This document shows, one piece after another, positions 2,815 through 63,872 of a stretch of 64,000 nt of DNA. Below the pieces are notes generated by a model, which saw only the letters and a program-made list of their open reading frames with translations, was not told where the DNA came from and searched no databases. A program made the translations under genes and the position numbers. The first letter of the stretch is position 1; each line of letters starts with the position of its first letter. This DNA is from Leucoraja ocellata (lineage: Eukaryota): NCBI GenBank assembly GCA_036785375.1, contig JAWMAR010001270.1, positions 1 to 64,000 of the forward strand, given 5' to 3'.

Positions 2815-2869
2815 ATGTCGTTTGGAGCATCAGTTCGATACATGACTCTTCTGGCTACAGTTTGGCACG
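2815..2869 (+). CDS. Gene A exon 1: signal peptide (MSFGASVRYMTLLATVWH) of VJ-C1 IgSF receptor
   Basis: ATG at 2815, 18 codons +1 nt, donor G|GTACGT (phase 1). A homologous 55-nt exon precedes each of the four V exons. Confidence 0.8.
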
Positions 2870-3271
2870 GTACGTTTAGATACATGTGGGGTTTCCGAAT
2901 CCCATGTCATGTTTTATAATATTCTATTTTAAAAAAAAGACACAACGTTCTGGAGTAATTCCGTGGGTCAGACAGCATCTTAGGAGAACGTGGATAGGTG
3001 ACGTTTCGGGTCGAAACTACTTCAGAATCTAAAGAAGACTCCTGGCCGCTGAGTTATTCCAGCACTCGGTGTCTTTTTTTGTAAACCAGCCGGTGCATTT
3101 CTTGTATCTCCTTAGAATATTCTATGTTGGTTACCAAGCACGAATTTAGTTACAGTGCTTCTTAATTCGTTTATGTCCGATTCTAGTTTATTTTGAATTT
3201 TTCAACTCTTTGTTCATTTTGCTTGTCCGGATGGCCAGCTGTTTTCAGTATTCTTGTTTTATTTCTGGCAG

Positions 3272-3577
3272 CCTTCGAAGTAACTTCAACCAAAGTGGAC
3301 CAATTCCCTAAAGACCTGACCGTCCACAGAGGAGGCAATGCGTCCATGTTCTGCACATTCTCAATACAACAAGTTACTCCTGATGTTTACTGGTGGAGAT
3401 GGGGCGAGAAGACATTTATAGAACCAGACAGCAGAAAACAATTTTCTATCAGAAAGGGCAGTGCGGATTTCATTCTCCTGAATACGAAAATCGCGGACTC
3501 CGGAGTTTATTATTGTAAATTGAAACAACAGCAGCAATCTATCGGAGATGGACCTGGCTCAAGGCTCACCGTGTTCG
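3272..3577 (+). CDS. Gene A exon 2: Ig V-set domain with germline-joined J-like G strand (NKp30/antigen-receptor-like)
   Basis: Acceptor ttctggcag|, donor G|GTAAGT, phase 1/1, 306 nt. Motifs MFC, VYWW, DSGVYYC and GDGPGSRLTV. Confidence 0.92.
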
Positions 3578-5079
3578 GTAAGTGCCCTGTAAGGGAGACA
3601 TTTTAAGCTTCCCGGGGTACAAGTAAAGCTCGCTGATATGAATAACATGACATTTTATAACTCGGCAAAAACTCGATAAGATTTATACTATAAAAACAAA
3701 CCGTTCCAAATCTGATATATTTAAATAATCCGTAAGTGGGTCAGCATCTGTGTAGAGCGAAAATGTCCTTTTCCTCATATCGTACTTCTCCAGACATTTT
3801 CCATTGCTCTCCTGTAGATTCGCGCTGTGCACTTTGGCGTTATTGCCCACGATTCAGATTCTCCGAAATCTGTAATCATTTAATCACTTAAAGTCTGGAA
3901 ACACGAAAATAAATCGATCTCTCGAGATTGGGATGTTAGAATATTCATTTAGATTAGGTATCGTGGGGTATGTGACAACAGGGTTTGTGACACAGAGACC
4001 TGACGCACAAACCACCCACGATTGAATTGAACAACGGAGCGGCCTCGGCCTTCATATTCTACTCTTATTCGTCGGCTGTAAACGAAGCTGAACCCCGGAT
4101 CAAACCACCGTGTTTATTATACAGATGAATCCTATAAACCGTTGAGAGGTTTGATTTGCTCGATTCTTACTCCAGGGACAGAATATCACCGTTTCACTCC
4201 GAGGATTCTCATTAAACCCTTAACCTTTATAAAATACGAGTAAGATTTAACGGCATTGGGGCAAACGCCTGAGCTCCCGTCCTTACAATTACATTCTTAC
4301 ATGACTCAACCACGTTTCCCACAAGAATCAGTCTCTCCACGTTATTCATTCTATCTAAATAGATCTGTGTTCGTGCCACAGATTAATTTTACGTTTTAGC
4401 TGATGATGCACTCGCCGAGGCTGAGAATAAGCATCGAGGTCTCCTCCGAGTTCAATAAAGAAACCGATCCAACAACCTGTTACTAAAGAAACGGAATGTA
4501 AAAATATTTAAAACTTATTAAACTCGTAGTCATCAACTCGTACAGCGATTTAACAAGAGGCCTCCTACTAACTACCTACTGATTTTAGATCCGACGGAGG
4601 TAGATCATCGTTCGCAAATTACCCACTCTGTGCTGATATAAGTGAAATCTTATTCAGACCAAACGTCTTCAACAAACCGAGTACATTTGGAAAATGGCAA
4701 AATTGTAGAAGAGACGTAGTCTAATTTGGATTTCCCATTCGCGTATTGTACTTATTGAAGAAGTGTCTAATATTTGCACGGCGATACTAATTATCAATAA
4801 ATAGACACAAAAAGCTGGAGTAACTTAACGGGACAGGCAGCATCACTGGAGAGAAGGAATGGGTCGAGATCCTTCTCCAGACATCTGCATTTCCTTCTTA
4901 ATAATTATTAGTATAACTCTATCATGCTCAAATTGTTCAGTTAGCGTTGTGGAGAAACGTCCCGGGCCAAAAGCTGTATCACTTGAGCCCTCCATCCCAG
5001 GTATTAAACAATTGTGTGGCCCAAGCTTTCATCTATGCAACTACGGCCTTCCTCTTGATTATTGATATTGGTGACATCT

Positions 5080-5395
5080 GGATATATACAGCGCTACATT
5101 GGTTAGCGCTGCCCACAATTTCAGCGACCCACCTTCAACCCAGATCCTGCGTGCGTCCATATATAGTTGTCCCCTTCAACGCGTAGACGTTCCTCCGGTG
5201 CTCCGGTTTATTCCGCGTGCCACAGATCTGCAGGTTGGTAGGAAAACTAGTCTCTGTAAATTGTCCCGGTTGATTGGTCGTGGTGAGGAGTGAAGAGGAA
5301 AGTTGACAGCAGATGAAAAATGAATAAGTAGAGATGGAGGTTTAATAACGCAATCTGCGCTGCTCTGTGCTGTGCTGTGCTGTGTATCTCTGTGA
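5080..5395 (+). mobile_element. Degenerate tRNA-derived SINE (HE1/V-SINE-like); copy at ~45370-45695
   Basis: Similar to the reverse complement of the SINEs at 21065 and 23035 (ccggtgctccggtt..., aaattgtccc, gctgtgtatctct tail). Confidence 0.55.
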
Positions 5396-5764
5396 TATTC
5401 CACTCTACACGTATCATTCTTTACACCAAAATCTCATAGAAACAGTCATTTTTGAACTGAACATAAAATTTTGTTGCCAGCGATGATACACCCCCCTCCA
5501 CGCTACTGATTTGGCACTTCAGAACATTGGCGATGTTTCAGAAGTCCACATATTACCTACATCCAAACCTCGGATTCCTTATGTATTGCTTGGATATATT
5601 TCACTGTCAAATCTAAAACAATGACAAATCAGTGGGTGCAAAAGCGATTGTACCGATAACCGATCTGATGGTGGGAGTGCAAGGTCGCGGTGTGACGAGG
5701 CAAACTAGAATGTTATCGTTGAATTGGAAAGAAAATATGCAACATATGTTTTCTTCTGTTACAG

Positions 5765-6055
5765 CTCCGCCAACTCCCCTGAGCATTAGCCAAGTTAATG
5801 GCAGTTCGCCGCCCAGACTTGTGTGTAAAACGGCTGCCTTTTCCCCGAAGGAAGTGAAAATATCCTGGCAAAGAAATGGTGTAACAATTTCCACCGGAGA
5901 AGAACGTGTGAACACCAGTAGCGTGGAGGAGTTGTATGTGGCTTCCAGCTTTCTCCAAGTAACGAAGCCTACCTGGCGCGTTGATATTTACACCTGCCTA
6001 GTGTCACATGTCTCCCTTGCGGTCCCGGCCAGAGTCGACTACACCGTCAAGCCAG
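5765..6055 (+). CDS. Gene A exon 3: Ig C1-set domain
   Basis: Acceptor tctgttacag|, donor G|GTAAG, phase 1/1. C1 hallmarks LVCKTAAFSP, ISW, YVASSFLQV and YTCLVSHVSL. Confidence 0.92.
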
Positions 6056-6329
6056 GTAAGACTGGCAAACAGAACTGGGAACAGAGGGAGACCTCCGATC
6101 CGATTTAGAAATATTGTTGGATACAGCTCAAACACGACTAGACGGGCTGAATGTGGACCGTGTTTATTCACCGCGGGAGTTCGGGCAAACTGACGTATCA
6201 TATGCTCTCATCTGTTTTCTAAATTATATCTGCATCTTCAATATTTATAGTGTCTGTGACGTGGCTAAACCTTCAAGGCTGTCAGAGGTGTTAGCAAACA
6301 AAAAATAATCAAAAAGACACAATCAGTGA

Positions 6330-8236
6330 GATGGGGATAGAGGTACACGTTCTTTATATATAGTCGGGAAATTACTTTGCAATGCTGAGATATTTCCCTA
6401 TTTTGAGGGTATGAGAGAAGGTCTAGCTCAACTTGATTGGGGCAGGTTATTTGAGGGGGAAGGAACATCGGCCAAGTGGGATGTTTTAAACGTATGCTGT
6501 AGAGAGCTCCGGGTGTGTACGTCTCCGTTAGAGTGAAAGGCAAAGCAGGCAAACGTGAAGAAGCTTGGCTGACGAGGGAAATTGAGACGTTAGTCAAAAA
6601 CAAGAAGGATGCATGGGACAGGTAAAGGCAGTTGGGATAAGTGCATCACTGGAGGAGTTTTGGGAAATAAGGAGCAAACTAAAAAAGGAGATCAGAAGGG
6701 CAAAAATTGGCCAGGAGATAGCTCTGGCGGGTACCATAAAAGACAATCCGAAAAGATTTTGTAAAAACATAAGGGGGGAAAGGATAACCAGAGAGAAAGT
6801 GGGACCTCTCAGGAATAAAAGCGGTCACCTCTGTGTGGAGCCACAGGAGATGGGTAAGGTCCTCAAAGAGTATTTCTCCTCTGCATTTACCAAGGAGAAA
6901 ACAGTAGGATGGAGGAAATTGGAGCAGTTACTGGAAGTGTCATGAGAGCATCGAGGAAGTACTGTCGAGGAAGTACTAAAGGTACTGTCTTGTTTGAAGG
7001 TAGTCAAATCTCTGGGGCCTGGTCGGATATATCAGAGGAAACAAGGGAGGAAATTGCGGAGGCCCTGGATTAAATGTATGTCGTCCTTAAATACAGGAGA
7101 GGTGCCAGAGGATTGGTGGGTGGCAAATGTTGTGCCTCTTTTCAAGAAGGACTGCAGGGAAAATGCTGGGAACTATAGGCTGGAGAGCTTAACATTTGTA
7201 GTTGATAAGTTACTGTGGAGTATTCTGAGGGATAGGTTATACATGCATTTGGATGGGCATGGGCTGATTAGGGACAGTCAGCATGGTTTTGTACGTGGGA
7301 CGTCGTGTCTCACAATCTGATTGATTGTTTTTGAAAACGTGGGCAAAAAGGTTGATGATGGCAGAGGGGTAGATGTTGTGTGCATGGATTTTAATAAGGC
7401 ATTCGACAAGGTGCCGCATGGTTGGCTGTTTTGGAAGGTTAGATCTCGTGGGATCTAAGGAGAGATAGCTGAATGGATAGTAAATTAGCTCCATGGAAGA
7501 AAATAGAATGTTAGTGGAAGATTGCTTCTCAGAATGGAGGCCAGTGACTAGTGGTGTGCCACAGGGTTCGGTGCTGGGCCCGTTACTGTTTGGCATCTAC
7601 ATCAATGATTTGGATGAAAACAAACAGGGCAAGATTAGCAAGATTGCTGATGATACAAAAGTTAGTGGTTTTGCAGATAGTGAAGATGGTTATGAACGAT
7701 TGCAGCAGGAACTGGATCGCTTGGCCACGTGGGCAGAGGAATGGTTGATGGAATTTAATACAGAGAAGTTTAAGGTGTTGCATTTTGGGAAGTCGAACAA
7801 GGGCAGGACCTAAACAGTAAATGCTAGTGGTGTAGAGCAGAGGGGTCTAGGAGTACAAGTGCATGGTTCCTTGAAGGTCGAATCGCAGGTGGTCAAAACG
7901 GCTTTTGGCACTTTGGCCTTCATCATTCAGAGTATTGAGTATAGATGTTGGTAGGTCATGTTGCAGTGGTATAAGACGTTGGTGAGACCACATTTAGAAT
8001 ATAGTGTTCAGTTCTGGGCACCATGTTATAGGAAAGATATTGTCAATCTTGAAATGGTTCAGAAAAGATTTACGATGATGTTGCCAGGTCTAGAGAGTGT
8101 GTGAGCTATAGGGAGACGTTAAGTAGGCTGGGTCTCTATTCCATGGAGCGTTGGAGGATGAGGGGAGATCTTATAGAAGTGTACACAATTATGAGGGGAA
8201 TAGATCGGGTAGATGCACAGATTCTACCCAGAGTAG
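6330..8236 (+). mobile_element. CR1 LINE ORF2 remnant, truncated at the duplication junction
   Basis: [14 protein letters not shown]...IADDTK, multiple stops. The paralogous copy at 46630-48860 retains its 3' end. Confidence 0.9.
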
Positions 8237-8250
8237 AATCTGTGCATCTA

Positions 8251-8720: not shown

Positions 8721-8955
8721 TGGAAGGTTACAAAGAGATGTCAGATCTGAAAATGACAGATCAAAGCAGACGACATATATTTATTCGCTAACTTGCAAAT
8801 AATGCAATTCGTTCCATTCGGTATATATTGGAATGCTTGTACACCAAGGATTAAAAAGACACATTCGGAGTGCTCTGCCTTCCTGACTCCTAATTTCTCA
8901 CCAGTTTCTTAGTTTATCTGTTTTACAGTTTTAAATGTATCTGCTTCTCCTGCAG

Positions 8956-9054
8956 ACTCTAATCTCGCACTGATTCTCGGATGTGTAGTGGGCGTATTGG
9001 CAATTTTAATCCCGATTATAATTTTGATAGTACTCAGAATAAAGGCAACAAATG
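8956..9054 (+). CDS. Gene A exon 4: uncharged transmembrane exon (DSNLALILGCVVGVLAILIPIIILIVLRIKATN)
   Basis: Acceptor ttctcctgcag|, donor G|GTAAGA, phase 1/1, 99 nt. About 23 hydrophobic residues followed by basic residues. Homologous to the TM exons of genes B and C. Confidence 0.85.
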
Positions 9055-9676: not shown

Positions 9677-9720
9677 ATGTTAATAAAAATTCGATGGAAT
9701 CAAGTCGAAGTGCAGAAACG
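9677..9720 (+). CDS. Gene A exon 5: short cytoplasmic exon (DVNKNSMESSRSAET)
   Basis: Strong acceptor ttgttttctttag|, donor |GTAGGG. Phase 1 to 0, which fits the last exon exactly. Confidence 0.7.
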
Positions 9721-11215: not shown

Positions 11216-11257
11216 GATCCTCAGCTAAATGTCAGGTAACCAGTTCACAATTACGTA

Positions 11258-17931: not shown

Positions 17932-18057
17932 ACTAAAGGAAGCGAAGCTGACAAGCCTACTTACGCTGCTCTGCAGTTTTCCAAATCAATTAAATCGGCA
18001 CCTAAACCCAAGAACGAACACCCAGTCTACGCAGATATAAATATTTCAAAGGGGTAA
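17932..18057 (+). CDS. Gene A exon 6: terminal cytoplasmic exon with two ITIM-like motifs (TKGSEADKPTYAALQFSKSIKSAPKPKNEHPVYADINISKG*)
   Basis: TACTAAC branch point at 17900-17906, acceptor ctttcacag|, phase 0, TAA at 18055-18057. Motifs TYAAL and VYADI. Joined model is 921 nt, 306 aa. Confidence 0.78.
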   Translation, partial: TKGSEADKPTYAALQFSKSIKSAPKPKNEHPVYADINISKG

Positions 18058-24486: not shown

Positions 24487-24541
24487 ATGTCGGTGAAAGT
24501 TAGAGTTTGGTCCATGGCTCTTCTGGTCATACTAACGCAGG
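24487..24541 (+). CDS. Gene B exon 1: signal peptide (MSVKVRVWSMALLVILTQ)
   Basis: 55 nt, donor G|GTATAG, phase 1. Paralogous to the A/C/D leaders. Confidence 0.8.
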
Positions 24542-24734: not shown

Positions 24735-25040
24735 CTACCGAAGTCTATTCGACCAGAGTGTCCCAATTCCCTGCCATCTTGGACGTTGGCGGCGGTGAAC
24801 ATGCTATCATGTATTGCACATTTCCAATATCGAAAGACACTATTGGCGTTAATTGGTGGAGGGACGGCATGAAGACATTCCTTGAACCGGACAGTAGAAA
24901 ACAATTTACGATAGATTCTGGAAGGGAAATATTTACTCTCCAACATGTGCGTGTCGCTGACTCCGGTCTGTATTACTGTCAAGTAAAGTTCCAGCATCAG
25001 GTTATCGGGAATGGAAGTGGCAGCCTGATCACCGTATTTG
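24735..25040 (+). CDS. Gene B exon 2: VJ-type Ig V domain
   Basis: Acceptor ttccccgacag|, donor G|GTGAGT, 306 nt. Motifs MYC, VNWW, DSGLYYC and GNGSGSLITV. Confidence 0.92.
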
Positions 25041-27060: not shown

Positions 27061-27354
27061 ATCCCCCAACTCCCTTGACAATTGTTCCTGCTGAAGGACT
27101 TGGATCTCCACGGAAACTTGTGTGCAAAACTGGCGCCTTTTATCCGGAGAAATTAGAAATAATCTGGCTAAGAAATAACGAGGAAATTCGCACTGGAATC
27201 GAAACTGTGAAAAAACCGAGCGAAGAAGGATTGTTTGTGGCTTCTAGTTTTTTGGAAATAACGCAGCCTGGGGAGGGCAAAGATATTTACACCTGTCTGG
27301 TATCGCATGTCTCCCTGAAGGTGGCGGCCAGTTTCAGTTATACCCTGGGCCAAG
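27061..27354 (+). CDS. Gene B exon 3: Ig C1-set domain
   Basis: Poly-T acceptor ...ttgcttaag|, donor G|GTAAGA. Motifs LVCKTGAFYPE, IIW and YTCLVSHVSL. Confidence 0.92.
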
Positions 27355-27886
27355 GTAAGACTGGAGTCAGTTACACATGATATTGGGGCGGTAGATCAAA
27401 TTCGATCAGATTAATAACTGGACAGCTTTCCGTACACGGAGCGAAGGGTAAATGTGGCTCGCATTTATTCGCATGAAAGCATCACTTGCATGCTGTTTAA
27501 AATTAATTGTACTTCATCAGTTCTTGTAAGGAAATCCGTGTGAGATGAATTGACAAACTGAATTGATATAATGATTGTAATGAGCAAAAACGTCCTGGGA
27601 TATGCATATATCTACTGTCTGGTGAAATATATGAAGATAAAGCCTAAATTCCGTTTAACGTCAGTAAGCAGCTTTCCGCACATGGGCACAATACAACGGC
27701 AATTGCTTGTCCTGTGGATTCCATTACTAACTTCCATCTGGTGCCTCGTGGTATACCTTCCAAACTTTCCGATGTGGGTATTAAAATGCACCTACGAAAT
27801 GATTTACTTTGTTGACTGCCGTTTGTATATTTGTTCTGAAATGTATAAATTCTTTACAGTTTCTAAATTTTCTGTTAATCCACCAG

Positions 27887-27985
27887 GAATTGATCGCAAA
27901 CAGATTATCGTATATGCAGTAGGTGGATCAGTAATTTTAATTCTGATTATAATCGTGATAGGACTCGCCTTAAAGATATGGCACG
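27887..27985 (+). CDS. Gene B TM exon 1, neutral (GIDRKQIIVYAVGGSVILILIIIVIGLALKIWH)
   Basis: Acceptor aatccaccag|, donor G|GTAAGA, phase 1/1, 99 nt, hydrophobic. Confidence 0.8.
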
Positions 27986-38460: not shown

Positions 38461-38467
38461 CCAATTT

Positions 38468-41032: not shown

Positions 41033-41063
<31 letters not shown>

Positions 41064-41401
41064 TGGTCTTACCAGAGTCTGATGTCCTGTCCGCTCGGAG
41101 TAAATGACGCCCCGATAACTGGATGGCGCTGTCAGTGTTGAGCCAAGTTTCAGTGAAGATCAAGATGTTGCAGTCCTTGATCCGGTTGTGGGAGGTGATC
41201 CTTAGCCGGAGTTCATCCATTTTGTTTGCCAGTGAGCGCACGTTGGCGAGGAAAAGGCTAGGAATCGCTGCCCTGTGTGGGGCTAGCTCTAACCTGGCCT
41301 TTAACCCATCTCTGCGTCCCCGGCGGTGTTTTCGTACCCGTCGCCGTCTGTTGGTGCTTCTGGTGGGCCGAGCAGGCTTGGTGCGCGCTGGTGTTCTGCC
41401 G
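38468..41401 (-). mobile_element. Rex1/Babar-clade LINE (APE endonuclease + RT, frameshifted), nested in CR1, apparent TSD CAATTT
   Basis: ORFs with [39 protein letters not shown] and YADD. (GAATCT)n 3' tail. CAATTT at 38462-38467 and 41402-41407. Absent from the paralogous site at ~1430. Confidence 0.88.
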
Positions 41402-42776
41402 CAATTTACCTTCGTACCTCATCTTTTCTCCCCGTATTGCCATTTGTTGCTCTTTAAACGTTTCCCAATCTTCTGGCTTCCTGTTCATCTATGCTATTTT
41501 ATATGTCTTCTCTTTTTATTTTTATATTGTCCCTGACTTCCCTTGTCAGCCACGGTCGCCGCTTACTCCCCTTGGAATCTGTCTTGCTCTTTGGAATGAA
41601 CTGATCCTGCACCTTCAGTATTATTCCAAGAAATACCTGCCATAGTTGAATCCATTGCCATCCCTGCTAGGGTATCTTTCCAGTCAACTTTGGCCAGCTC
41701 TTCCCTCATCGTTTCATAGTCCCCTTTGTTCAACTGTAATACTGACACCTCCGATTTATCCTTCTCCCTCTCAAATTGTAGATTAAAATTTATCAGATTA
41801 TGGTCACCACCTCCTAATGGCTCCTTGACATCGAGTTCCCTTTATCAAATGCGGTTTATTACACAACACTAAATCCAAAATTGCCTTCTCCCTGGTAGGT
41901 TCCAGTACAAGCTGCTCTAAGAATCCATCTCGGAGGCACTCCACAAACTCACTTTCTTGGGGTCCAGTACCAGCAACTGCAGCTCCTTCACACACATTGT
42001 ATCGTATCGTAGTACCTGAAATTTGAAAATATAATGTTCAAACCATTAGTTTGTAAGCTACTCAAGTGAAATGTAAAGTGCTGGTCTTCCAGTTTGTGTG
42101 TTGGTCTCACTCTGGCAGTGGGGGACGGAAAGGACGGAAAGGTCGGTATGGGAAGGAAAAGGTACGTTCAATTGGTTAGCAACCCAGAGCTCCAGCTGGC
42201 CTTCGCGAACAGGGCAAGGTTCGCGATCTAAAATATCGTCTGTCCATTCCTTCCGCCGATGCTGCCTGACCCGCTGAGTTCCTCCAGCATTCTGTTCTTT
42301 GCTGAAGGAACACAGCAGATTAGAGGTATCCATTTGCTCTATAGGTGCTGGATAGCTTGTTGGGTCCGTCGAGCAGTACAAAAATAATTTACGTGGAACG
42401 AGAAAACTAGTAAAATACACTGAAGAACAGAATTTTGTTTGTGGTAGAAAAGTACTGGAATAATACAACGGTGATATGGACGTTTCGGGTCCCTTCATTC
42501 AGTCCCAACACCTGCAGTTCCTCGTGTCTCCATTTTGTTTGTGTAATTCAATTAGTGATAGCTTCTGCTCTCGGGATTCTTTAGTGCTCCCGGGAGGTCT
42601 CGGAGAAAATTCTACATCAAGCATAAATGTTTCACCTGGGAGATGAGATGGGATGCCTTAAAATAAAACGAAATATGAAACCCACTGCACTGTCACATGA
42701 TATCCGGCGTCATGAAATACACGAATCTTTGAAGAGGCTTCCTCATTTGCAGCAAGCGACCGCCTCATTTTGCAAA

Positions 42777-42831
42777 ATGTCGTTTGGAGCATCAGTTCGA
42801 TACATGACTCTTCTGGCTACAGTTTGGCACG
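42777..42831 (+). CDS. Gene C exon 1: signal peptide (identical to gene A leader)
   Basis: 55 nt, donor G|GTACGT. Confidence 0.8.
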
Positions 42832-43224
42832 GTACGTTTACATACATGTGGGGTTTACGAATCTCATGTCATATTTTATATTATTCTATTTTTAAAAAAG
42901 ACATGTAGTTCTAGAGTAATTCCGTGGGTCAGGCAGCATCTAAGGAGAACGTGGATAGGTGACGTTTCGGGTCGAAACTACTTCAGAATCTAAAGAAGAC
43001 TCTTGGCCGCTGAGTTACTCCAGCACTCGGTATCTTTTTTTGTTAACCAATTCCTTGTATCTCCTTAGAATATTCTATGTTGGTTACCAAGCACGAATTT
43101 AGTTACAATGCTTCTTAATTCGTTTATGCCCGATTCTAGTTTATTTTGAATTTTTCAACTCTTTGCTCATTTTGCTTGTCCGGGTGGCCAACTGTTTTCA
43201 GTATTCTTGTTTTATTTCTGGCAG

Positions 43225-43530
43225 CGTTCGAAGTAACTTCAACCAAAGTGGACCAATTCCCTAAAGACCTGACCGTCCACAGAGGAGGCAATGCGTCCAT
43301 GTTCTGCACATTCTCAATACAACAAGTTACTCCTGATGTTTACTGGTGGAGATGGGGCGAGAAGACATTTATAGAACCAGACAGCAGAAAACAATTTTCT
43401 ATCAGAAAGGGCAGTGGGGATTTCATTCTCCTGAATACGAAAATCGCGGACTCCGGAGTTTATTATTGTAAAGTGAAACAACAGCAGCAATCTATCGGAG
43501 ATGGACCTGGCTCAAGGCTCACCGTGTTCG
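43225..43530 (+). CDS. Gene C exon 2: VJ-type Ig V domain (2 aa differences from gene A)
   Basis: AG/GT boundaries, phase 1/1, 306 nt. DSGVYYCKVKQQQQSIGDGPGSRLTV. Confidence 0.92.
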
Positions 43531-46063
43531 GTAAGTGCCCTGTAAGGGAGACATTTTAAGCTTCCTGGGGTACAAGTAAAGCTCGCTGATATGAATAACA
43601 TGACATTTTATAACGGCAAAAACTCGATAAGATTTATACCATAAAAACAAACCGTTCCAAATCTGATATATTTAAATAATCCGTAAGTGGGTCAGCATCT
43701 GTGTAGAGATAAAATGTCCTTTTCCTCATTTCGTACTTCTCCAGAGATTTTCCATTGCTCTCCTGCAGATTCGCGCTGTCCACTTTGGCGTTATTGCCCA
43801 CGATTCAGATTCACCCTTTACTACCCTCCATGGTGTGCTTGAATGTATTTACATCAAATGACTTAGATTAAAAGGTTGTTTAGAATTGTTTTTCATGGAC
43901 AAGGTTGAAGCCACGTGGATGTTTTAATCTCAGTTGTGATAGGAATGTCCCATTTCTGCTCCCGAAGACAACGGAATAATGTTAACACCTCCATCCTGGA
44001 TAGGTTCTTTAAAACAATATTCAAACGCCACCACTCTACGCCAATAGTGGTTACAATCTCATAAGAATAGTGTTTACAGTCCATATTGATTCACACATAA
44101 TTTTCGCTTTTTACGCGCCACCTTACAAATTATCTCCGAAATCTGTAATCATTTAATCACTTAAAGTCTGGAAACAAGAAAATAAATCGATCTCTCGAGA
44201 TTGGGATGTTAGAATATTAATTTTGATTAGGTATCGTGTGGTATGTGACAACAGGGTTTGTGACACAGAGACCTGACACAAAAACCATCCACGATTGAAT
44301 TGAACAACGGAGCGGCCTCGGCCTTAAATATTCTACTCTCATTCGTCGCCTGTAAACGAAGCTGAACCCCGGATCAAACCACCATGGTTATTATACAGAT
44401 GAATCCTATAAACCGTTGAGAGGTTTGATTTGCTCGATTCTTACTCCAGGGACAGAATATCACCGTCTCACTCCGAGGATTCTCATTAAACCCTTAACCT
44501 TTATAAAATACGAGTTAGATTAAACGGCATTGGGGCAAACGCCTGAGCTCCCGTCCTTACAATTACATTCTTACATGACTCAACCACGTTTCCCACAAGA
44601 ATCAGTCTCTCCACGTTTCCCCCCAATTATTCATTCTATCTAAATAGATCTGTGTTCGTGCCACAGATTAATTTTACGTTTTAGCTGATGATGCACTCGC
44701 CGAGGCTGAGAATAAACATTGAGGTATCCCCCGAGTTCAATAAAGAAACCGATTCAACAACCTGTTACTAAAGAAACGGAATGTAAAAATATTTAAAACT
44801 TATGAAACTCGTAGTCATCAACTCGTAGAGCGATTTAACAACCTACTAACTACCTACTGATTGTAGATCCGACGGAGGTAGATCATCGTTCGCAAATGAC
44901 CCACTCTGCTGATATAAGTGAAATCTTATTCAGACCAAACGTCTTCAACAAACCGAGTACATTTGGAAAATGGCAAAATTGTAGAAGAGACGTAGTCTAA
45001 TTTGGATTTCCCATTCGCGTATTGTACTTATTGAAGACGTGTCTAATATTTGCACGGCGATACTAATTATCAGTAAATAGATACAAAAAGCTGGAGTAAC
45101 TTAACGGGACAGGCAGCATCTGTGGAGAGAAGGAATGGGTGACGTTTCGGGTCGAGATCCTTCTCCAGACATCTGCATTTCCTTCTTAATAACTATTAGT
45201 ATAACTCTATCATGATCAAATTGCTCAGTTAGCGTTGTGGAGAAACGTCCCGGGCCAAAAGCTGTATCACTCGAGCCCTCCATCCCAGGTATTAAACAAT
45301 TGTGTGGCCCAAGCCTTCATCTATGCAACTACGGCCTGCCTATTGATTATTGATATTAGTGACATCTGGATATATACAGCGCTACATTGGTTAGCGCTGC
45401 CCACAATTTCAGCGACCCAAGTTCGACCCAGATCCTGCGTGCGTCCATATATAGTTCTCCCCTTCAACGCGTAGACATTCCACCGGTGCTCCGGTTTATT
45501 CCGCATGCCACAGATATGCAGGTTGGTAGGAAAACTAGCCTCTGTAAATTGTCCCGGTTGATTGGCCGTGGTGAGGAGTGAAGAGGAAAGTTGACAGGAG
45601 ATGAAAAATGAATACGTGGAGATGGAGGTTTAATGACGCAATAGGTAATCTGGGCTGCTCTGTGCTGTGCTGTGCTGTGCTGTGTATCTCTGTGATATTC
45701 CACTCTACACGTATCATTCTTTACACCAAAATCTCGTAAAAACAGTCATTTTTGAACTGAACATAAAAGGTTGTTGCCATCGATGATACACCCCCGCCAC
45801 GCTACTGATTTGGCACTTCAGAACATTGGCGATTTTTCAGAAGCCCACATATTACCTACATCCAAACCTCGGATTCCTTATGTATTGCTTGGATATATTT
45901 CACTGTCAAATCTAAAACAATAACAAATCAGTGATTGCAAAAGCGATTGTACCGATAACCGATCTGATGGTGGGAGTGCAAGGTCGCGGTGTGACGAGGC
46001 AAACTAGAATGTGATCGTTGAATTGGAAAGAAAATATGCAACATATTTTTTCTTCTGTTACAG

Positions 46064-46354
46064 CTCCGCCAACTCCCCTGAGCATTAGCCAAGTTAATGG
46101 CAGTTCGCCGCCCAGACTTGTGTGTAAAACGGCTGCCTTTTCCCCGAAGGAAGTGAAAATATCCTGGCAAAGAAATGGTGTAACAATTTCCACCGGGGAA
46201 GAACGTGTGAACATCAGTAGCGTGGGGGGGTTGCATGTGGCTTCCAGCTTTCTCCAAGTAACGAAGCCTACCTGGCGCGTTGATATTTACACCTGCCTAG
46301 TGTCACATGTCTCCCTTGAGGTCCCGGCCAAAGTCGACTACACCGTCAAGCCAG
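46064..46354 (+). CDS. Gene C exon 3: Ig C1-set domain (6 aa differences from gene A)
   Basis: Acceptor tctgttacag|, donor G|GTAAGA, 291 nt, C1 motifs intact. Confidence 0.92.
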
Positions 46355-46629
46355 GTAAGACTGGCAAACAGAGCTGGGAACAGAGGGAGACCTCCGATCC
46401 GATTTAGAAATATTGATGGATACAGCTCAAACACGACTAGACGGGCTGAATGTGGACCGTGTTTATTCGCCGCGGGAGTTCGGGCAAACTGACGTATCAT
46501 ATGCTCTCATATGTTTTCTAAATTATATCTGCATCTTCAATATTTATAGTGTCTGTGACGTGGCTAAACCTTCAAGGCTGTCAGAGGTGTTAGCAAACAA
46601 AAAATAATCAAAAAGACACAATCAGTGAG

Positions 46630-48860
46630 ATGGGGATAGAGGTACACGTTCTTTATATATAGTCGGGAAATTACTTTGCAATGTTGAGATATTTCACTAT
46701 TTTGAGGGTATGAGAGAAGGTCTAGCTCAACTTGACTGGGGCAGGTTATTTGATGGGGAGGGAACATCGGCCAAGTGGGATGTTTTAAACGTATGCTGTA
46801 GAGAGCTCAGGGTGTGTACGTCTCCGTTAGAGTGAAAGGCAAAGCAGGCAAACGTAAAGAAGCTTGGCTGACGAGGGAAATTGAGACGTTAGTCAAAAAC
46901 AAGAAGGATGCATGGGACAGGTAAAGGCAGTTGGGATAAGTGCATCACTGGAGGAGTTTTGGGAAATAAGGAGCAAACTAAAAAAGGAGATCAGAAGGGT
47001 AAAAATTGTCCAGGAGATAGCTCTGGCGGGTACCATAAAAGACAATCCGAAAAGATTTTGTAAAAACATAAGGGGGGAAAGGATAACCAGAGAGAAAGTG
47101 GGACCTCTCAGGAATAAAAGCGGTCACCTCTGTGTGGAGCCACAGGAGATGGGTAAGGTCCTCAAAGAGTATTTCTCCTCTGCATTTACCAAGGAGAAAA
47201 CAGTAGGATGGAGGAAATTGGAGCAGTTACTGGAAGTGTCATGAGAGCATCGAGGAAGTACTGTCGAGGAAGTACTAAAGGTACTGTCGTGTTTGAAGGT
47301 AGTCAAATCTCTGGGGCCTGGTCGGATATATCAGAGCGCATTGCGGGACACAAGGGAGGAAATTGCGGAGACCCTGGATTAAATGTATGTCGTCCTTAAA
47401 TACAGGAGAGGTGCCAGAGGATTGGTGGGTGGCAAATGTTGTGCCTCTTTTCAAGAAGGACTGCAGGGAAAATGCTGGGAACTATAGGCTGGAGAGCTTA
47501 ACATTTGTCGTTGATAAGTTACTGTAGAGTATTCTGAGGGATAGGTTATACATGCATTTGGACGGGCATGGGCTGATTAGGGACAGTCAGCATGGTTTTG
47601 TACGTGGGACGTCGTGTCTCACAATCTGATTGATTGTTTTTGAAAACGTGGGCAAAAAGGTTGATGAGGGCAGAGCTGTAGATATTGTGTGCATGGATTT
47701 TAATAAGGCATTCGACAAGGTGCCGCATGGTTGGCTGTTTTGGAAGGTTAGATCTCGTGGGATCTAAGGAGAGATAGCTGAATGGATAGTAAATTAGCTC
47801 CATGGAAGAAAATAGAATGTTAGTGGAAGATTGCTTCTCAGAATGGAGGCCAGTGACTAGTGGTGTGCCACAGGGTTCGGTGCTGGGCCCGTTACTGTTT
47901 GGCATCTACATCAATGATTTGGATGAAAACAAACAGGGCAAGATTAGCAAGATTGCTGATGATACAAAAGTTAGTGGTTTTGCAGATAGTGAAGATGGTT
48001 GTGAACGATTGCAGCAGGAACTGGATCGCTTGGCCACGTGGGCAGAGGAATGGTTGATGGAATTTAATACAGAGAAGTTTAAGGTGTTGCATTTTGGGAA
48101 GTCGAACAAGGGCAGGACCTAAACAGTAAATGCTAGAGGTGTAGAGCAGAGGGGTCTAGGAGTACAAGTACATGGTTCCTTGAAGGTCGAATCGCAGGTG
48201 GTCAAAACGGCTTTTGGCACTTTGGCCTTCATCATTCAGAGTATTGAGTATAGACGTTGGTAGGTCATGTTGCAGTGGTATAAGACGTTGGTGAGACCAC
48301 ATTTGGAATATAGTGTTCAGTTCTGGGCACCATGTTATAGGAAAGATATTGTCAATCTTGAAATGGTTCAGAAAAGATTTACGATGATGTTGCCAGGTCT
48401 AGAGCGTGTGTGAGCTATAGGGAGACGTTAAGTAGGCTGGGTCTCTATTCCATGGAGCGTTGGAGGATGAGGGGAGATCTTATAGAAGTGTACACAATTA
48501 TGAGGGGAATAGATCGGGTAGATGCACAGATTCTACCCAGAGTAGGGGAATCGTGGACCAGAGGACATAGGTTCAAGGTGAAGGGGAAAAGATTTAATAG
48601 GAATCCGAGGGGTAACATTTTCACACAGAGGGTGGAGGGTGTAAGTAACAAGCTGCCAGAGGAGGTGGTTGAGGCTGGGACTATCCCATCGTTTAAGAAA
48701 CAGTTGGACAGGTACATGGATAGGAAATGTTTGGAGGGTTATGGACCAAGCACAGGCAAATGGGACTAGGGTAGCAGGGACATTGTTGGCCGGTGTACGC
48801 GAGTTGGGCCGAAGGGCATGTTTCCACACTGTATCATTCTGTGACTGTATGACTCTTCTC
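46630..48860 (+). mobile_element. CR1 LINE ORF2 remnant with intact 3' end
   Basis: RT motifs and ...GYGPSTGKWD* followed by the 3' UTR. Confidence 0.9.
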
Positions 48861-49266: not shown

Positions 49267-49371
49267 GTTCGGCCAGCGTTGTCCTTGTCCTTCGCAATGT
49301 AGGAGGTACATTGATCATTCTACTGGTGTTGGCTACCTTGAGAATTGTTTTTGGATCAAACTCTGCCAAAG
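49267..49371 (+). CDS. Gene C exon 4: Arg-containing transmembrane exon (GSASVVLVLRNVGGTLIILLVLATLRIVFGSNSAK)
   Basis: Acceptor ttttacgtctgcag|, donor G|GTGAAT, phase 1/1. Arg near the N-terminus of the hydrophobic stretch, aligned with the xVGG motif of the paralogous TM exons. Confidence 0.8.
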
Positions 49372-60785: not shown

Positions 60786-62480
60786 GACCTCCCAAAGTGC
60801 ACCACACTTGCACACTCATTCTGCCATTTCTCCGTCCATTTCTGCAACTGATTATAATCCCTCATATAACTTGACTGCCAACCTCTTTTCCACAAGTTTC
60901 CCAATTTTGGTATTATTTGATAACTACTAACCAACCCATTTATTTGCAAATCATTTTTATATATTGCTGATGACAGAGGTCCCAGTGCAGATCCCCGAGA
61001 AACTTTATTGGTCACAGACATCCAGCTAAAATAACTCACTTCCATCACAGCACTCAGTCTGCTCTGAGTAAGTCAGTTCTGAATTCCAACAACCACATCA
61101 CCTTGGATTCCAAACACTTTCATCTTTTGGATTACCTACCATGAGGGATTCAATCAAATGTCTAGCCAAAAATAAACTAAGACAGCATTCACTGCCCCAC
61201 CCAGATCAATCACCTTCATCTCCTGCTCAAAAACACCAATCAGGGTCATAATACATGGCCTTCTATGTACAAAGCCACGCTGACTGTCTTTAATTAGCCC
61301 ATTTTCTTCCAAACACAAATAGAGCCTCTCCCAAATAATCCACTCCAATAGCTGATCTATCCCTGATGTGAGGCCCAGTCCTATAATTTCCTTGATCATC
61401 TCTAGTTTCCTTCTTAAACAAAGGAACAATATTGGCTGTTCTTCAGTCCTCTGGAGTGTTGCCCTTCAGCTAAAGAAATTATTAAGTGTAGGAAGGAACT
61501 GCAGATGCTGATTTACACCAAAGAAAAACACAAAATGTTGGAGTAACTCAGCAGGTCAGGCAGCAACCCTAGATAGAAGGAATGGATGACATTTCAGGTT
61601 GAGACCCTTCTGCAAACTGAGAGTCAGTGGAGAGGGAGACACAAAGATATGGAAGGGTAGGGTGTGAAAACAAGATATCAAAGGGGACGGAGTACAACAA
61701 AAATGTACAATAGATCATCCAGACCTCCAGCCTGAATATTGTTCTTCCACCACTACCCACTGCCTTCTATTAGTAAGCCATTTATGAATCCATACAATCA
61801 AATCATTGTTAATCCTCTGTCAAAACACAAGATCCTGATCTTTTGGATCAGCCTACATCAAATGCATCCCTAAAATCTATGTAGATGCCATCTGCCATTC
61901 TACTGTCATGGATCACCTTTGCTCCTTCTTCAAAAAATCTGGAGCATTAATAAAAACATGACCTGTCATGTACAAAGCCATGCTGACTGTCTAAATGAAA
62001 CCATTCTCTTCCAAATGGAAGTAAATCCTATCCAAATGAATCATATCCAATAGCCTCCCTATTATTGACGTGTGGTGCACCAGGCCCATATTAGTTAAAT
62101 TCCCTCTATTTCCCTTTTTAAACAATGGAACAACATTAGCTACTCTGCAGTCCTCCAGATCATTGCATTTAGCCAGAAAAAATGCTAAAATCTTTGTCAA
62201 GGTTCTTGCAATTTCCGCTCTTGCCTCTCTCAAGAAATATATCGCATTAGGCCCTGTGGATTTATCCACGTTAATGTTTTTTTAAAAACCCCTGTATCTT
62301 AATCCAAAATCTGTCCTTGAATATTAATATTCTCAACACTGAACTCACCGTCTTCCATGCCCTTCTCCTCAGTCAATACAGATGCAATGTATCTGTTTAG
62401 TACTTTGCCTCAACCCGTCTCCATGCACAACATTGAGTGACCCCTCCCCTATCTTCGTTACCCTCTTGTTTTAATGTAGG
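60786..62480 (-). mobile_element. Old CR1 RT fragments interrupted by hammerhead-like short repeats
   Basis: Minus-strand remnants RVANVVPLFKKG and LIKDSQRGFV. Confidence 0.7.
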
Positions 62481-63305
62481 TATTTTTTTTAAGGGATTGT
62501 ATGTAATCCGACTCCCCAAAACCATTTTGTGGCAGCTTTTATACTGGAGTCACTCAGCAGGACAGGCAGCATCTCTGGAGACAAGGAATGGGTGACGTTT
62601 CGGGACCCTTCTTCAAGCGTCTGGTGGCAACTTTTGGTCCTTCTAATCGTCCATTTCAGTTCATCCTTCCTTGCTTTATATTCCAATTAAAATCAGGCTG
62701 TGTTGAAGCGAAAGAAATAAAGAAAGAAATATCTGGGTTAGTTACTCCTGTTGTTTTTCCAGTGGGCTTCAAGCCCCGGGACATGGAACATAAGAGAGAT
62801 TAGAAAGACATCAAACCCGAAGTGCGGTGACGAAATAAATTCATAAACTCATAAATCAAAGCAGAATTAGACCATTCAGCCCATCGAGTCTTCTCCGCCA
62901 TTCTATCATGACTGATTAACCCTTCGCTCTCAACCACATTCTCCTTCCTTCCCCCGGTAATTTTTTTTTTAAGTTCATATTAGATTGTAAGTCCCTTACG
63001 TCGAATGAGGAAAATCTGCGATTCTCTTCTGAATGGTCAGTCAATCATTTGAACATGGATCCAGGGAAGTCTGAGAGAGAATTGTACCCCGATAGAAACT
63101 GTTCACTTGGCAGTGGGGGCGGACCCTCGCTCATACTAGCACTCCACCAACACCGAACCAAATGTGAAACCCACTTTACCGTCATGTGACATCCTATGTC
63201 ATGGTCACAAGCGGAAAATATTTATTCACCAGCAACTCTTTCTTGCAAGGATCTTTTAGGAAACTTCTCTCATTTGCAACAAACGGCCAACAACTTTCTT
63301 ATAAT

Positions 63306-63360
63306 ATGACAGTGGAAGCATCATTTCGGTACATGGCCCTTCTGGTGACAGTTTGGCAAG
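63306..63360 (+). CDS. Gene D exon 1: signal peptide (MTVEASFRYMALLVTVWQ)
   Basis: 55 nt, donor G|GTACTT. Paralogous to the A/C leader. Confidence 0.8.
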
Positions 63361-63566
63361 GTACTTTTAGATATATGTGCCGGTCCATCATATTCAATTC
63401 TGTTTTAGAATACTCCATTTAGTTGCCCACTGTGAATTTAGTTACAGTGCTTCTCCAGCTCGCTTGTCGCTAATTCTAATTTACTGTTGTAATTTTCAAC
63501 TCTTGATTCATTTTCCTTGTCCAGTTTGTGCAACTGTTTTCAGTGTTTTTCCTTAATTTCTGGCAG

Positions 63567-63872
63567 CCAACGAAGTAACTTCGACCAAAGTGGACCAATT
63601 CCCGAAAGAGCTGACAGTCCACAGAGGAGGCAATGCGTCCATGTTCTGCACGTTCTCAATACAACAAGTTACTCTTGATGTTTCTTGGTGGAGATGGGGA
63701 GAGAAGACATTTATAGAACCAGACAGCAGAAAAATAATTTCTACCAAAAAGGGCAGTGGGGATTTTGTTCTCCTGAATGCAAATGTAGCGGACTCCGGGG
63801 TTTATTATTGTAAAGTGAAACATCAGCAGCAATCTATCGGAGATGGAGCTGGCTCCAGGCTGACTGTAATTG
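63567..63872 (+). CDS. Gene D exon 2: VJ-type Ig V domain (rest of the gene lies beyond the window)
   Basis: Acceptor tttctggcag|, donor G|GTAAGT, 306 nt. DSGVYYCKVKHQQQSIGDGAGSRLTV. Confidence 0.92.

What the first reader, a model, noticed from the sequence alone, without database searches (positions are those of the whole stretch)
2815..63872. Tandem family of non-rearranging VJ-C1 immunoreceptors forming a paired activating/inhibitory system
Seen in sequence: four + strand genes share a 55-nt leader and a 306-nt V exon, and the three complete ones add a C1 exon, joined by phase-1 introns. The V exon already contains the J-like G strand (C-x9-G-x-G-x-G-S-x-L/I-T-V), so V and J are germline-joined. 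The signalling halves differ: A has a neutral TM and two Tyr motifs, C has an Arg TM and no ITIM, and B has both TM types. Established knowledge: C1-set domains are largely confined to Ig/TCR/MHC/B2M/tapasin/SIRP-type molecules. NKp30 (NCR3) has a single VJ-type domain with, as I recall, the same Cys-to-GxG spacing and a TM Arg, but no C1. VJ-C1 genes such as PRARP/VJC1 have been proposed as proto-antigen-receptor relatives. Inference: this is a chondrichthyan multigene VJ-C1 paired receptor family with TCR/Ig-light-chain-like ectodomain architecture and innate NK-type signalling. Automated pipelines would likely label it only 'SIRP-like' or 'NCR3-like'.
Basis: partly seen in the sequence, partly recalled or inferred. 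Interest (0 to 1): 0.92.

Follow-up and report, generated by a model that had tools for sequence, protein, structure and literature searches.

The report
SIRP-like V-C1 paired receptor gene cluster
Four neighbouring genes in a cartilaginous fish encode cell-surface receptors built like a one-chain antibody arm, in versions that look made to switch immune cells off or on; the family exists unnamed in many shark and ray genomes and most resembles the known SIRP receptors.

Summary
Four + strand genes share a 55-nt leader exon and a 306-nt V exon (4 of 4). Three add a C1-set exon. All introns are phase 1 with AG/GT borders. The J-like G strand lies inside the V exon and there is no RSS. Gene A has a neutral TM and a two-tyrosine tail. 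Gene C carries a 96% copy of A's ectodomain cassette on an Arg TM exon. Gene B has two alternative TM exons (neutral, Arg) and a decayed tail. The N gap (32909-33221) lies between B and C, outside every exon.

Relatives were found only in Chondrichthyes. They are V-C1-TM proteins that RefSeq names SIRP-alpha-like, NCR3-ligand-like, tapasin-like or IgL-like. The closest known non-rearranging family is SIRP (PDB rank 8 of 5792; Atlas 0.97). NKp30 never ranked. SIRP is already a described V-C1 paired family, so novelty is moderate.

Untested: splicing (no RNA run holds gene B), linkage and function. The key shark NCR3 paper could not be read. The scan's first-stage notes report similar NKp30-like and V-C1 genes on other pieces of this genome.

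The parts
2815..2869 (+). Gene A leader exon (55 nt, ends in phase 1)
   Evidence: ATG at 2815, GT donor at 2870. Aligns to residues 1-17 of homologues.
3272..3577 (+). Gene A V exon (306 nt) with a J-like G strand
   Evidence: AG/GT borders. Pfam V-set 4.7e-08. Motif C-x9-GxGxGSxLTV present.
5765..6055 (+). Gene A C1-set exon (291 nt)
   Evidence: Pfam C1-set 1.6e-13. 13 residues from Cys to Trp, FSP and CLVSH.
8929..9054 (+). Gene A stalk and neutral TM exon (126 nt)
   Evidence: AG/GT borders and translation. Aligns to the TM of homologues.
9677..9720 (+). Gene A tentative first cytoplasmic exon (44 nt, phase 1 to 0)
   Evidence: AG acceptor and GTAGGG donor. Restores the frame of the last exon. 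Only weak similarity to homologues (E 0.13-0.25).
17932..18057 (+). Gene A last exon: tail with PTYAAL and PVYADI, then stop
   Evidence: 44-56% identical to the C-termini of family members.
24487..24541 (+). Gene B leader exon (55 nt)
24735..25040 (+). Gene B V exon (306 nt)
   Evidence: Pfam I-set/V-set.
27061..27354 (+). Gene B C1-set exon (294 nt)
   Evidence: Pfam C1-set 7.5e-12.
27860..27985 (+). Gene B TM exon 1 (neutral)
   Evidence: Aligns to the same homologue segment as TM exon 2.
29025..29126 (+). Gene B TM exon 2 (Arg in the TM, Cys in the stalk)
   Evidence: 83% nt identity to A's TM exon. Its CGT (Arg) codon aligns with A's TGT (Cys) codon.
30332..30442 (+). Gene B last exon, homologous to A's but without tyrosines
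   Evidence: 79-88% nt identity to A over the acceptor region.
42777..42831 (+). Gene C leader exon (identical to A's, 0 of 55 differences)
43225..43530 (+). Gene C V exon (3 of 306 nt differ from A)
46064..46354 (+). Gene C C1-set exon (7 of 291 nt differ from A)
49267..49371 (+). Gene C TM exon with Arg. Read-through of its donor stops after 2 codons.
63306..63360 (+). Gene D leader exon (55 nt)
63567..63872 (+). Gene D V exon (306 nt). The rest of the gene lies beyond the window.
   Evidence: Pfam V-set 3.8e-09.
888..8236 (+). Copy 1 of the ectodomain cassette (upstream DNA, leader, V, C1 and 2.2 kb beyond)
   Evidence: 96.3-96.9% identical to 37918-48545 in three blocks. Reverse-transcriptase (LINE-type) ORFs lie at the downstream end of both copies; the upstream-end ORFs gave no Pfam match.
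37918..48545 (+). Copy 2 of the ectodomain cassette (gene C)
32909..33221 (.). Assembly gap (313 N) between genes B and C, outside all exons

Best explanation
The window holds part of a tandem cluster of a V(J)-C1 type I membrane receptor family found across Chondrichthyes. In architecture and signalling logic the family is SIRP-like.

Shown:
- Each gene encodes a split leader, one germline-joined V domain, one C1-set domain, a stalk/TM exon and a variable tail.

Inferred:
- The V domain binds an unknown ligand.
- Forms with a neutral TM and a tyrosine tail (gene A; canonical LTYAAL...TEYAEI tails in relatives) would recruit SH2 phosphatases and inhibit.
- Forms with an Arg in the outer part of the TM and almost no tail (gene C, gene B through TM exon 2) would pair with an acidic ITAM adaptor and activate.
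- A and C carry nearly the same ectodomain because a 7-10 kb cassette was copied onto two different signalling halves. That is the classic signature of a paired receptor.
- Gene B looks like an inhibitory gene turning activating. It has a duplicated TM exon with an Arg codon where A has Cys, and a tail exon that has lost its tyrosines.
- In A and B, splicing a TM exon straight to the last exon gives Asp plus stop. Use of the small 44-nt exon would then decide whether a tail is made.

Not resolved: whether the family is orthologous to SIRP.
For: Gene structure:
- Exon anatomy, phases and splice sites.
- Pfam V-set and C1-set. C1 hallmarks met in 3 of 3 C1 exons (criteria from PMC2785349, passages read).
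- No RSS in the window.
- Exon translations align one after another, and abutting, on full-length homologues. For example, on P0027 the leader aligns to residues 1-17, V to 21-120, C1 to 122-214, TM to 225-251 and the last exon to 304-344.
- Both B TM exons align to the same homologue segment.

Selection and duplication:
- V-exon dN/dS is 0.28-0.36 for the 5 pairs with synonymous changes.
- In the A/C copies the V exon differs at 1.0%, against 3.4-5.9% in the flanking introns.
- The cassette duplicate was found.

Family and nearest known relatives:
- Relatives are chondrichthyan only: 27 of 27 named representatives, 31 of 31 hits and 31 of 33 hits.
- Crude census of 82 family proteins: 26 have a neutral TM with ITIM/ITSM and 15 have a basic TM residue without one.
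- SIRP-alpha is the only chain among the best 60 PDB matches of homologue P0166 that is neither an antibody nor an engineered antigen-receptor-type chain: rank 8 of 5792, 48.6 bits against 51.4 for the top light chain.
- The two best named Atlas clusters for P0048 are SIRP-alpha, at 0.97.
Against: - No transcript evidence. The 3 small runs guessed to be RNA covered only repeats and none of gene B's exons.
- A's two tyrosine motifs have Pro at -2 and miss the ITIM consensus.
- The 44-nt exon has a weak donor and only weak similarity to homologues.
- No cytoplasmic exons were found for C. No frame-restoring exon was found for B.
- SIRPs have two C1 domains and a TM Lys; these genes have one C1 domain and a TM Arg.
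- By sequence the ectodomain is as close to Ig lambda light chains as to SIRP-alpha. No bony-vertebrate SIRP came up.
- A-C divergence (1-6%) is of the same order as the roughly 2% difference between the window and DNA run X1 in gene B. A mis-assembled allele is therefore not fully excluded.
- The Atlas and PDB evidence rests on homologues, not on the window's own spliced proteins.
Confidence: 0.68

Rival explanations
1. These are true members (orthologues or co-orthologues) of the SIRP family. On this reading they are already-known receptors in a new lineage and bind a CD47-like ligand.
For: - Atlas: the two best named clusters for homologue P0048 are SIRP-alpha, at 0.97 with 208-209 of 256 features.
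- SIRP-alpha 2wng_A is rank 8 of 5792 for P0166.
- RefSeq names many members SIRP-alpha-like or SIRP-beta-1-like.
- Isoforms that skip C1 exist in the family, as reported for SIRPs (PMC12975943, passage read).
Against: - One C1 domain, not two, in 3 of 3 genes.
- Arg rather than Lys in the TM.
- Ig light chains score as high as SIRP-alpha.
- SIRP-alpha was not among the best 60 for the single V or C1 exon, or for the V profile.
- No non-chondrichthyan SIRP was retrieved.
Confidence: 0.3
2. This is the shark NCR3/NKp30 multigene family already described for nurse shark (Kinlein et al. 2021), here with an added C1 domain.
For: - Single-exon VJ-type domain and an Arg in the TM of C and B-TM2.
- The doubled GxG before the J-like LxV resembles human NKp30 as I recall it (recall, not a call).
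- First-stage notes on this genome call similar V domains NKp30-like (unchecked AI notes).
Against: - NKp30 chains were not among the best 60 in 4 PDB searches that included the V domain.
- No hit named NCR3 or NKp30, and none from nurse shark, among the 31 and 33 hits.
- The literature read describes NKp30/NCR3 as a VJ-domain gene. It presents UrIg as the novel VJ-C1 gene of the elasmobranch MHC (PMC10751288 passages; PMC12227049 section 7).
- The white shark MHC is on chromosome 19. The white shark family member P0064 sits on a 193.5-Mb record, probably another chromosome (inference).
- The 2021 paper itself could not be read.
Confidence: 0.12
3. Part of the picture is artefact or decay. The A/C pair would be a mis-assembled allele next to a scaffold gap, and some genes (B, perhaps A) would be pseudogenes, so there is no working paired system here.
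For: - An N gap lies between A/B and C.
- A-C divergence is similar to the difference between the window and DNA run X1.
- B's tail has lost its tyrosines. A's ITIM-like motifs are degenerate. No RNA support was found.
Against: - The duplicate ends at 8236/48545, where reverse-transcriptase (LINE-type) ORFs lie, and each copy continues into a different, intact TM exon.
- All 16 core coding exons (leader, V, C1, TM) are open and have AG/GT borders.
- dN/dS is well below 1.
- The V exon is more conserved than its flanking introns between A and C.
Confidence: 0.1

Closest known systems
SIRP family (SIRP-alpha, -beta, -gamma)
   Same: - N-terminal V domain with a J-like G strand, followed by C1-set domains.
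- Inhibitory members with tyrosine tails and activating members with a basic TM residue and a short tail.
- Splice forms without the C1 part.
- Nearest non-antigen-receptor match by sequence and by language-model features.
- The same C1 hallmarks, including FSP as in SIRP-alpha d2 (PMC2785349).
   Different: - One C1 domain instead of two.
- Arg instead of Lys in the TM.
- Ligand unknown.
- Orthology and synteny untested.
- Relatives seen only in Chondrichthyes.
NKp30 / NCR3
   Same: - Germline-joined VJ-type domain in one exon.
- Short V domain (53 residues between the cysteines).
- Arg in the outer part of the TM of the activating forms.
   Different: - NKp30 is described with a single Ig domain and no C1 (PMC11999971 passage).
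- It did not rank in any PDB search here.
- Shark NCR3 is stated to be MHC-linked (PMC12227049); linkage of this cluster is unknown.
Ig light chains and TCR chains
   Same: - V-J-C1 order, split leader and phase-1 introns.
- Ig lambda light chains are the top PDB matches of homologue P0166, aligned from mid-V through J into C.
- An antibody Fab light chain (6al0_L) is the best single-domain match of A's C1 exon, at 47 bits.
   Different: - No RSS and no separate V and J segments.
- A TM and signalling tail sit on the same chain.
- A tandem family of complete genes.
UrIg / UrIg2 (non-rearranging shark VJ-C genes)
   Same: - Non-rearranging single-exon VJ plus C1-type domains in cartilaginous fish.
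- UrIg2 (9dmx) is the top whole-chain PDB hit of A's C1 exon, at 4.4e-18.
   Different: - UrIg2 has nine C domains in nurse shark and is discussed as an antibody-like molecule (PMC12227049 section 7).
- These genes have one C1 domain and NK-type signalling halves.
- The UrIg2 V domain was not among the best 60 hits of the V searches.
Paired NK and myeloid receptor families in general (KIR, Ly49, PILR, CD200R: recalled, no call)
   Same: - Near-identical ectodomains on inhibitory and activating signalling halves.
- Activating forms arise from inhibitory ones by a TM point change and tail loss.
   Different: - Different domain types (no C1 domain) and different lineages.

Membership tests
SIRP | N-terminal V-set domain with a J-like G strand | tested here: met
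   Pfam V-set. GxGxGSx[LI]TV in 4 of 4 V exons.
SIRP | [quoted passage not shown] | tested here: not met
   One C1 exon per gene in 3 of 3 genes. tblastn with the stored proteins under 700 aa (including all family members) found no further C1 exon. One relative (P0120, Amblyraja) has two.
SIRP | C1 hallmarks: 13 residues from Cys to Trp, [FY][FYH]P-type BC motif, CxVxH | tested here: met
   13 residues, FSP/FYP and CLVSH in 3 of 3 C1 exons. Criteria from PMC2785349; FSP is listed there for SIRP-alpha d2.
SIRP | Inhibitory member with cytoplasmic ITIMs | tested here: inconclusive
   Gene A has PTYAAL and PVYADI, both with Pro at -2. Relatives have canonical LTYAAL and TEYAEI.
SIRP | Activating member with a basic TM residue and a short tail | tested here: met
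   Arg in C's TM and in B's TM exon 2. It is Arg, not the Lys I recall for SIRP-beta (the review read says only 'positively charged').
SIRP | Closer in sequence to SIRPs than to other IgSF families | tested here: inconclusive
   SIRP-alpha is rank 8 of 5792 for homologue P0166 but level with Ig light chains. Atlas 0.97 for P0048. SIRP-alpha was absent from the best 60 for single exons.
SIRP | Binds CD47; conserved synteny with SIRP loci | not testable with these tools
NCR3 / NKp30 | Single-exon VJ-type Ig domain | tested here: met
NCR3 / NKp30 | Ectodomain of one Ig domain only | tested here: not met
   A C1 exon follows the V exon in 3 of 3 genes. The description of NKp30 comes from the PMC11999971 passage. 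The shark paper was not readable.
NCR3 / NKp30 | Sequence similarity to NKp30 V domains | tested here: not met
   No NKp30 chain among the best 60. Only human NKp30 is in the PDB, so shark NCR3 remains untested.
NCR3 / NKp30 | MHC linkage in sharks | not testable with these tools
   No MHC marker lies in the window. There is only an indirect hint against linkage, from record size in white shark.
Rearranging antigen receptors (IgL, TCR) | Separate V and J segments flanked by RSS | tested here: not met
   0 RSS-like pairs in the window. The J-like strand is inside the V exon.
UrIg / UrIg2 | VJ exon followed by several C1-type domains | tested here: not met
   A single C1 exon followed by a TM exon. 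The UrIg2 architecture comes from PMC12227049 section 7.

The most novel reading that the evidence does not exclude
This chondrichthyan-wide family could be a surviving branch of the ancestral membrane-bound VJ-C1 receptor, from which both the SIRPs and the light-chain/TCR-type antigen receptors descend. It would then be a third non-rearranging relic beside UrIg and UrIg2, but one that still carries NK-type signalling. Within it, gene B could be a single gene that switches between a neutral and an adaptor-coupled receptor by mutually exclusive TM exons.
Probability: 0.12. Interest if true: 0.85.

Novelty: new variant of a known kind. Interest (0 to 1): 0.52.

Why it matters
C1-set domains are almost confined to antigen receptors, MHC molecules and a few associates. 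SIRPs have long been quoted as the link between innate receptors and the precursor of antigen receptors (PMC2785349). That paper states that no SIRP genes were known from organisms that predate the adaptive immune system (its Discussion, read).

A V(J)-C1 family with inhibitory and activating forms in chimaeras, sharks and rays would place this receptor type at the base of the jawed vertebrates. It would also give comparative immunologists a third kind of non-rearranging VJ-C1 gene to compare with UrIg and UrIg2.

The window also shows several steps in how paired receptors are made:
- an ectodomain cassette copied onto another signalling half;
- a TM Arg codon aligned with a Cys codon one base away;
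- a duplicated TM exon;
- a tail exon losing its tyrosines.

The practical point is that current annotation gives the family at least eight unrelated names.

Tried and rejected
Searches that led nowhere:
- The search for homologous proteins with the 137-aa ORF over A's V exon found nothing. Six candidates were scored and none passed.
- The Atlas search on the V part of P0025 gave only generic V-set clusters.
- The V-profile search of the PDB was swamped by multi-Ig proteins such as titin, contactins and Robo, through summed domain scores. The single-exon search was swamped the same way.
- A 46-aa search of the E-F-G strands gave CD4, Fc receptors and TCR J regions at E 0.004-0.1. It gave no NKp30.

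RNA test:
- No listed run holding gene B is on record as RNA.
- Contigs of the three small runs guessed to be RNA lay only on repeats, in 7, 7 and 5 of 30 bins. None lay on B's exons. The junctions are therefore neither supported nor refuted.

Exon hunting:
- A sensitive tblastn of family tails was too noisy to use.
- A strict splice-site scan missed even A's own 44-nt exon.
- A motif search found no such exon in B.

Rejected readings:
- UrIg-type secreted molecule: rejected because there is a single C1 exon followed by TM exons.
- B7H6 or B7 family: rejected because C1-set scores 1.6e-13 against 1.3e-04 for CD80-like C2, and because a J-like strand is present.
- The two TM exons of B used in series: rejected because both align to the same homologue segment.

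Literature:
- Read as passages or sections: PMC12227049, PMC10751288, PMC2785349, PMC12975943, PMC11999971, PMC11599192, PMC12619710, PMC3964593, PMC10450919 and PMC12272517.
- Not held, so not read: Kinlein 2021 (PMC8273117), Flajnik 2012 (PMC3709836), Janes 2023 (PMC11019866), the UrIg 2023 paper (PMC10530332) and Ohta and Flajnik 2015 (PMC4594805).
- Searches for a description of this family found none. One search (PRARP) returned only unrelated uses of the word in its 12 listed papers. One search was too loose (7,308 papers) to prove anything.
- Supplements were closed. The gene tables of PMC10751288 may list these genes or the NCR3 positions.

Full report
THE WINDOW AND THE GAP

The window is repeat-rich DNA of about 42% G+C. 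It has many ORFs from non-LTR retroelements. Pfam gave RVT_1 for 5 and Exo_endo_phos for 1 of the 9 ORFs scanned; the other 3 had no match.

One N run of 313 letters lies at 32909-33221. It sits 2.5 kb after the stop of gene B and 9.6 kb before the leader of gene C, so no predicted exon touches it and no frame crosses it. Its left flank is unique G+C-rich DNA (0.58-0.60), its right flank is unique DNA of 0.45 G+C, and no repeat bridges the two. The order and spacing of B and C therefore rest on the scaffold alone.

Reading the sequence and checking borders by script gives four + strand genes.
- Each of the four has a 55-nt leader exon and a 306-nt V exon.
- Three have a C1 exon of 291, 294 and 291 nt. 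Gene D runs off the window.
- All listed borders are AG...GT. The introns between leader, V, C1 and TM exons are phase 1.
- Pfam calls the V exons V-set/I-set and the C1 exons C1-set.
- The C1 exons meet the three C1 hallmarks listed by Hatherley et al. 2009 (passages read): exactly 13 residues from Cys to Trp, FSP or FYP, and CxVxH. All three hold in 3 of 3 exons.
- The J-like strand C-x9-GxGxGSx[LI]TV is inside all four V exons. The window holds no RSS-like heptamer/nonamer pair.
- The V domain is short, with 53 residues between its cysteines.

THE SIGNALLING HALVES

Gene A has a neutral TM exon (8929-9054). Its last exon (17932-18057) encodes PTYAAL and PVYADI.
- Both motifs carry Pro at -2 and so miss the ITIM consensus.
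- The last exon is in phase 0, so an exon of length 2 mod 3 is needed. A 44-nt candidate at 9677-9720 fits. Its donor is weak and its similarity to homologues is only E 0.13-0.25.

Gene B has two TM exons, one neutral (27860-27985) and one with Arg (29025-29126).
- Both align to the same segment of full-length relatives, so they are alternatives, not a series.
- The Arg exon is 83% identical in DNA to A's TM exon. Its CGT (Arg) codon aligns with A's TGT (Cys) codon.
- B's last exon is homologous to A's but has no tyrosine.

In both A and B, joining a TM exon directly to the last exon gives Asp and then a stop.

Gene C has a different Arg TM exon (49267-49371). Reading through its donor stops after two codons. 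tblastn with the family proteins found no tyrosine-tail exon downstream of C.

A AND C SHARE ONE ECTODOMAIN CASSETTE

Positions 888-8236 match 37918-48545 at 96.3-96.9%. The match ends before the TM exons, which are unrelated between A and C. Differences between the two copies:
- leader: 0 of 55;
- V exon: 3 of 306;
- C1 exon: 7 of 291;
- intron 1: 23 of 393;
- intron 2: 75 of 2175.

V-exon dN/dS is 0.28-0.36 among the five pairs that have synonymous changes. The exons are thus under constraint, or are homogenised.

One caution applies. DNA run X1 differs from the window by about 2% in gene B. The A-C difference is therefore of allelic size, and only depth or long reads can exclude a mis-assembly. 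The two copies continue into different, intact TM exons, which argues for a real duplication.

RELATIVES

Full-length searches used natural database proteins.

The exhaustive HMMER search with A's V exon gave 395 proteins at E up to 0.001. Apart from giant multi-Ig proteins, the best hits are single-domain matches of 48-62% identity to proteins of 183-414 aa. Their sequences show leader-V-C1-TM-tail.
- I looked up 30 representatives. Of these, 27 carry a name and all 27 are from sharks, rays or the elephant fish. The other 3 come from raw assemblies.
- A word-index search with P0151 gave 31 hits, all chondrichthyan.
- A profile of 24 members gave 33 hits. Of these, 31 were chondrichthyan at E up to 3.5e-38. 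The other two were MHC-I-like proteins matched through the C1 domain.
- RefSeq names for family members include SIRP-alpha-like, SIRP-beta-1-like, NCR3 ligand 1-like, tapasin-related, Ig lambda-like, TCR beta-like, CD276 homolog and MHC class II beta-like.
- The exon translations of A and B align in order, and abutting, on these proteins. This supports the predicted junctions indirectly.

A V-domain tree of 87 rows was built from 106 V-domain matches that scored above 60 bits over more than 80 profile positions; duplicates were then removed.
- A, C and D form one clade (support 100/100).
- B joins an unnamed contig protein, next to Mobula and Hypanus genes that have long tyrosine tails.
- All four window genes lie in a clade of 20 rows whose 14 named rows are all batoids. 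The window is therefore probably from a ray or skate.

A crude census of 82 members found the following:
- 26 with a neutral TM and at least one ITIM/ITSM;
- 15 with a basic TM residue and no such motif;
- 10 neutral without a motif;
- 8 mixed;
- 23 without a detectable TM.

Both receptor types therefore recur across species.

WHAT IT IS CLOSEST TO

- A's C1 exon hits UrIg2 first as a whole chain (4.4e-18). Its best single-domain match is an antibody Fab light chain (6al0_L), at 47 bits.
- Homologue P0166 lies in the same clade as A, C and D. Its top PDB matches are lambda light chains (51.4 bits), aligned from mid-V through J into C.
- SIRP-alpha (2wng_A) is rank 8 of 5792 at 48.6 bits. It is the only chain among the best 60 that is neither an antibody nor an engineered antigen-receptor-type chain.
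- The Atlas places P0048 next to two SIRP-alpha clusters at 0.97.
- NKp30 did not appear among the best 60. No protein named NCR3 or NKp30 appeared.

The papers I could read call NKp30/NCR3 a VJ-domain gene linked to the MHC. They present UrIg as the novel VJ-C1 gene of the elasmobranch MHC.

The white shark MHC is on chromosome 19. The white shark family member lies on a 193.5-Mb record, which is probably another chromosome. That last step is an inference.

The paper that describes the shark NCR3 family (Kinlein 2021) is not held. I therefore cannot exclude that it covers a V-C1 form.

HOW IT MOST LIKELY WORKS

Shown:
- the domain and exon anatomy;
- the two TM types;
- the cassette copy;
- sequence constraint on the exons;
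- the family's range.

Inferred from established knowledge of paired receptors:
- The V domain binds a ligand.
- Neutral-TM forms with tails inhibit through SH2 phosphatases.
- Arg-TM forms couple to an acidic ITAM adaptor.
- The Arg lies in the outer part of the helix. As I recall, that position fits FcR-gamma/CD3-zeta-type partners better than DAP12.
- The C1 domain may pair with another C1 domain, since C1 domains are always found paired (PMC2785349).

VERDICT

The finding is real and well read. Its architecture, lineage and annotation prediction are borne out.

The family's members are already predicted in more than fifteen chondrichthyan genomes, and its nearest known kind, SIRP, is a characterised V-C1 family with inhibitory and activating members.

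It is best filed as a new variant of that kind:
- two Ig domains rather than three;
- Arg-based activating forms;
- chondrichthyan-wide distribution;
- unnamed, and not found described in the papers I could search.

First-stage notes of this scan report similar V-C1 and NKp30-like genes on other pieces of the same genome, and further family members just beyond this window. These are unchecked leads.

Noticed in passing
window 26150-26300, 28080-28170, 29450-29600 (also near 4803-4864, 14930-15021, 15530-15621, 19531-19616, 20325-20411, 45073-45173, 56520-56615, 61528-61617, 62541-62616): A short interspersed repeat of about 90 nt occurs at least ten times in the window. It has enormous depth in DNA run X1. 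It is the only part of gene B's region present in the small runs guessed to be RNA. It is probably a SINE or a LINE tail.
   Followed up: partly
window 8250-8723 vs 11392-11865 (98.5%); 12369-13072 vs 21890-22592 (96.6%): Near-identical fragments of a non-LTR retroelement lie inside gene A's long intron. RVT_1 ORFs were confirmed. This suggests a recently active LINE family. Reverse-transcriptase ORFs of this kind also lie at the downstream end of the A/C cassette (the upstream-end ORFs gave no Pfam match).
   Followed up: partly
window 31811-32908: Unique G+C-rich DNA (0.58-0.60) abuts the left side of the N gap. It has two overlapping ORFs of about 300 aa, rich in Pro and Ser, with no Pfam match. 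It could be a CpG island, the first exon of another gene, or low-complexity DNA.
   Followed up: partly
window 24749, 27243, 27250, 27305: DNA run X1 differs from the window at four places inside gene B's V and C1 exons. By my reading of the codons, three are non-synonymous (Ser to Pro, Ser to Thr, Phe to Ser) and one is silent. The sample is small but hints at polymorphism in the ectodomain.
   Followed up: no
proteins P0025, P0045, P0058, P0064, P0164, P0204 (relatives, not the window): A third TM type recurs in sharks and the elephant fish. It has an Arg near the outer end and an Asp/Glu-His pair near the inner end of the helix, with a short tail. No such exon was seen in the window.
   Followed up: no
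window 36888-41241, - strand: A large, partly intact non-LTR element (endonuclease plus reverse transcriptase ORFs) lies in a stretch of about 0.51 G+C between the gap and gene C.
   Followed up: partly
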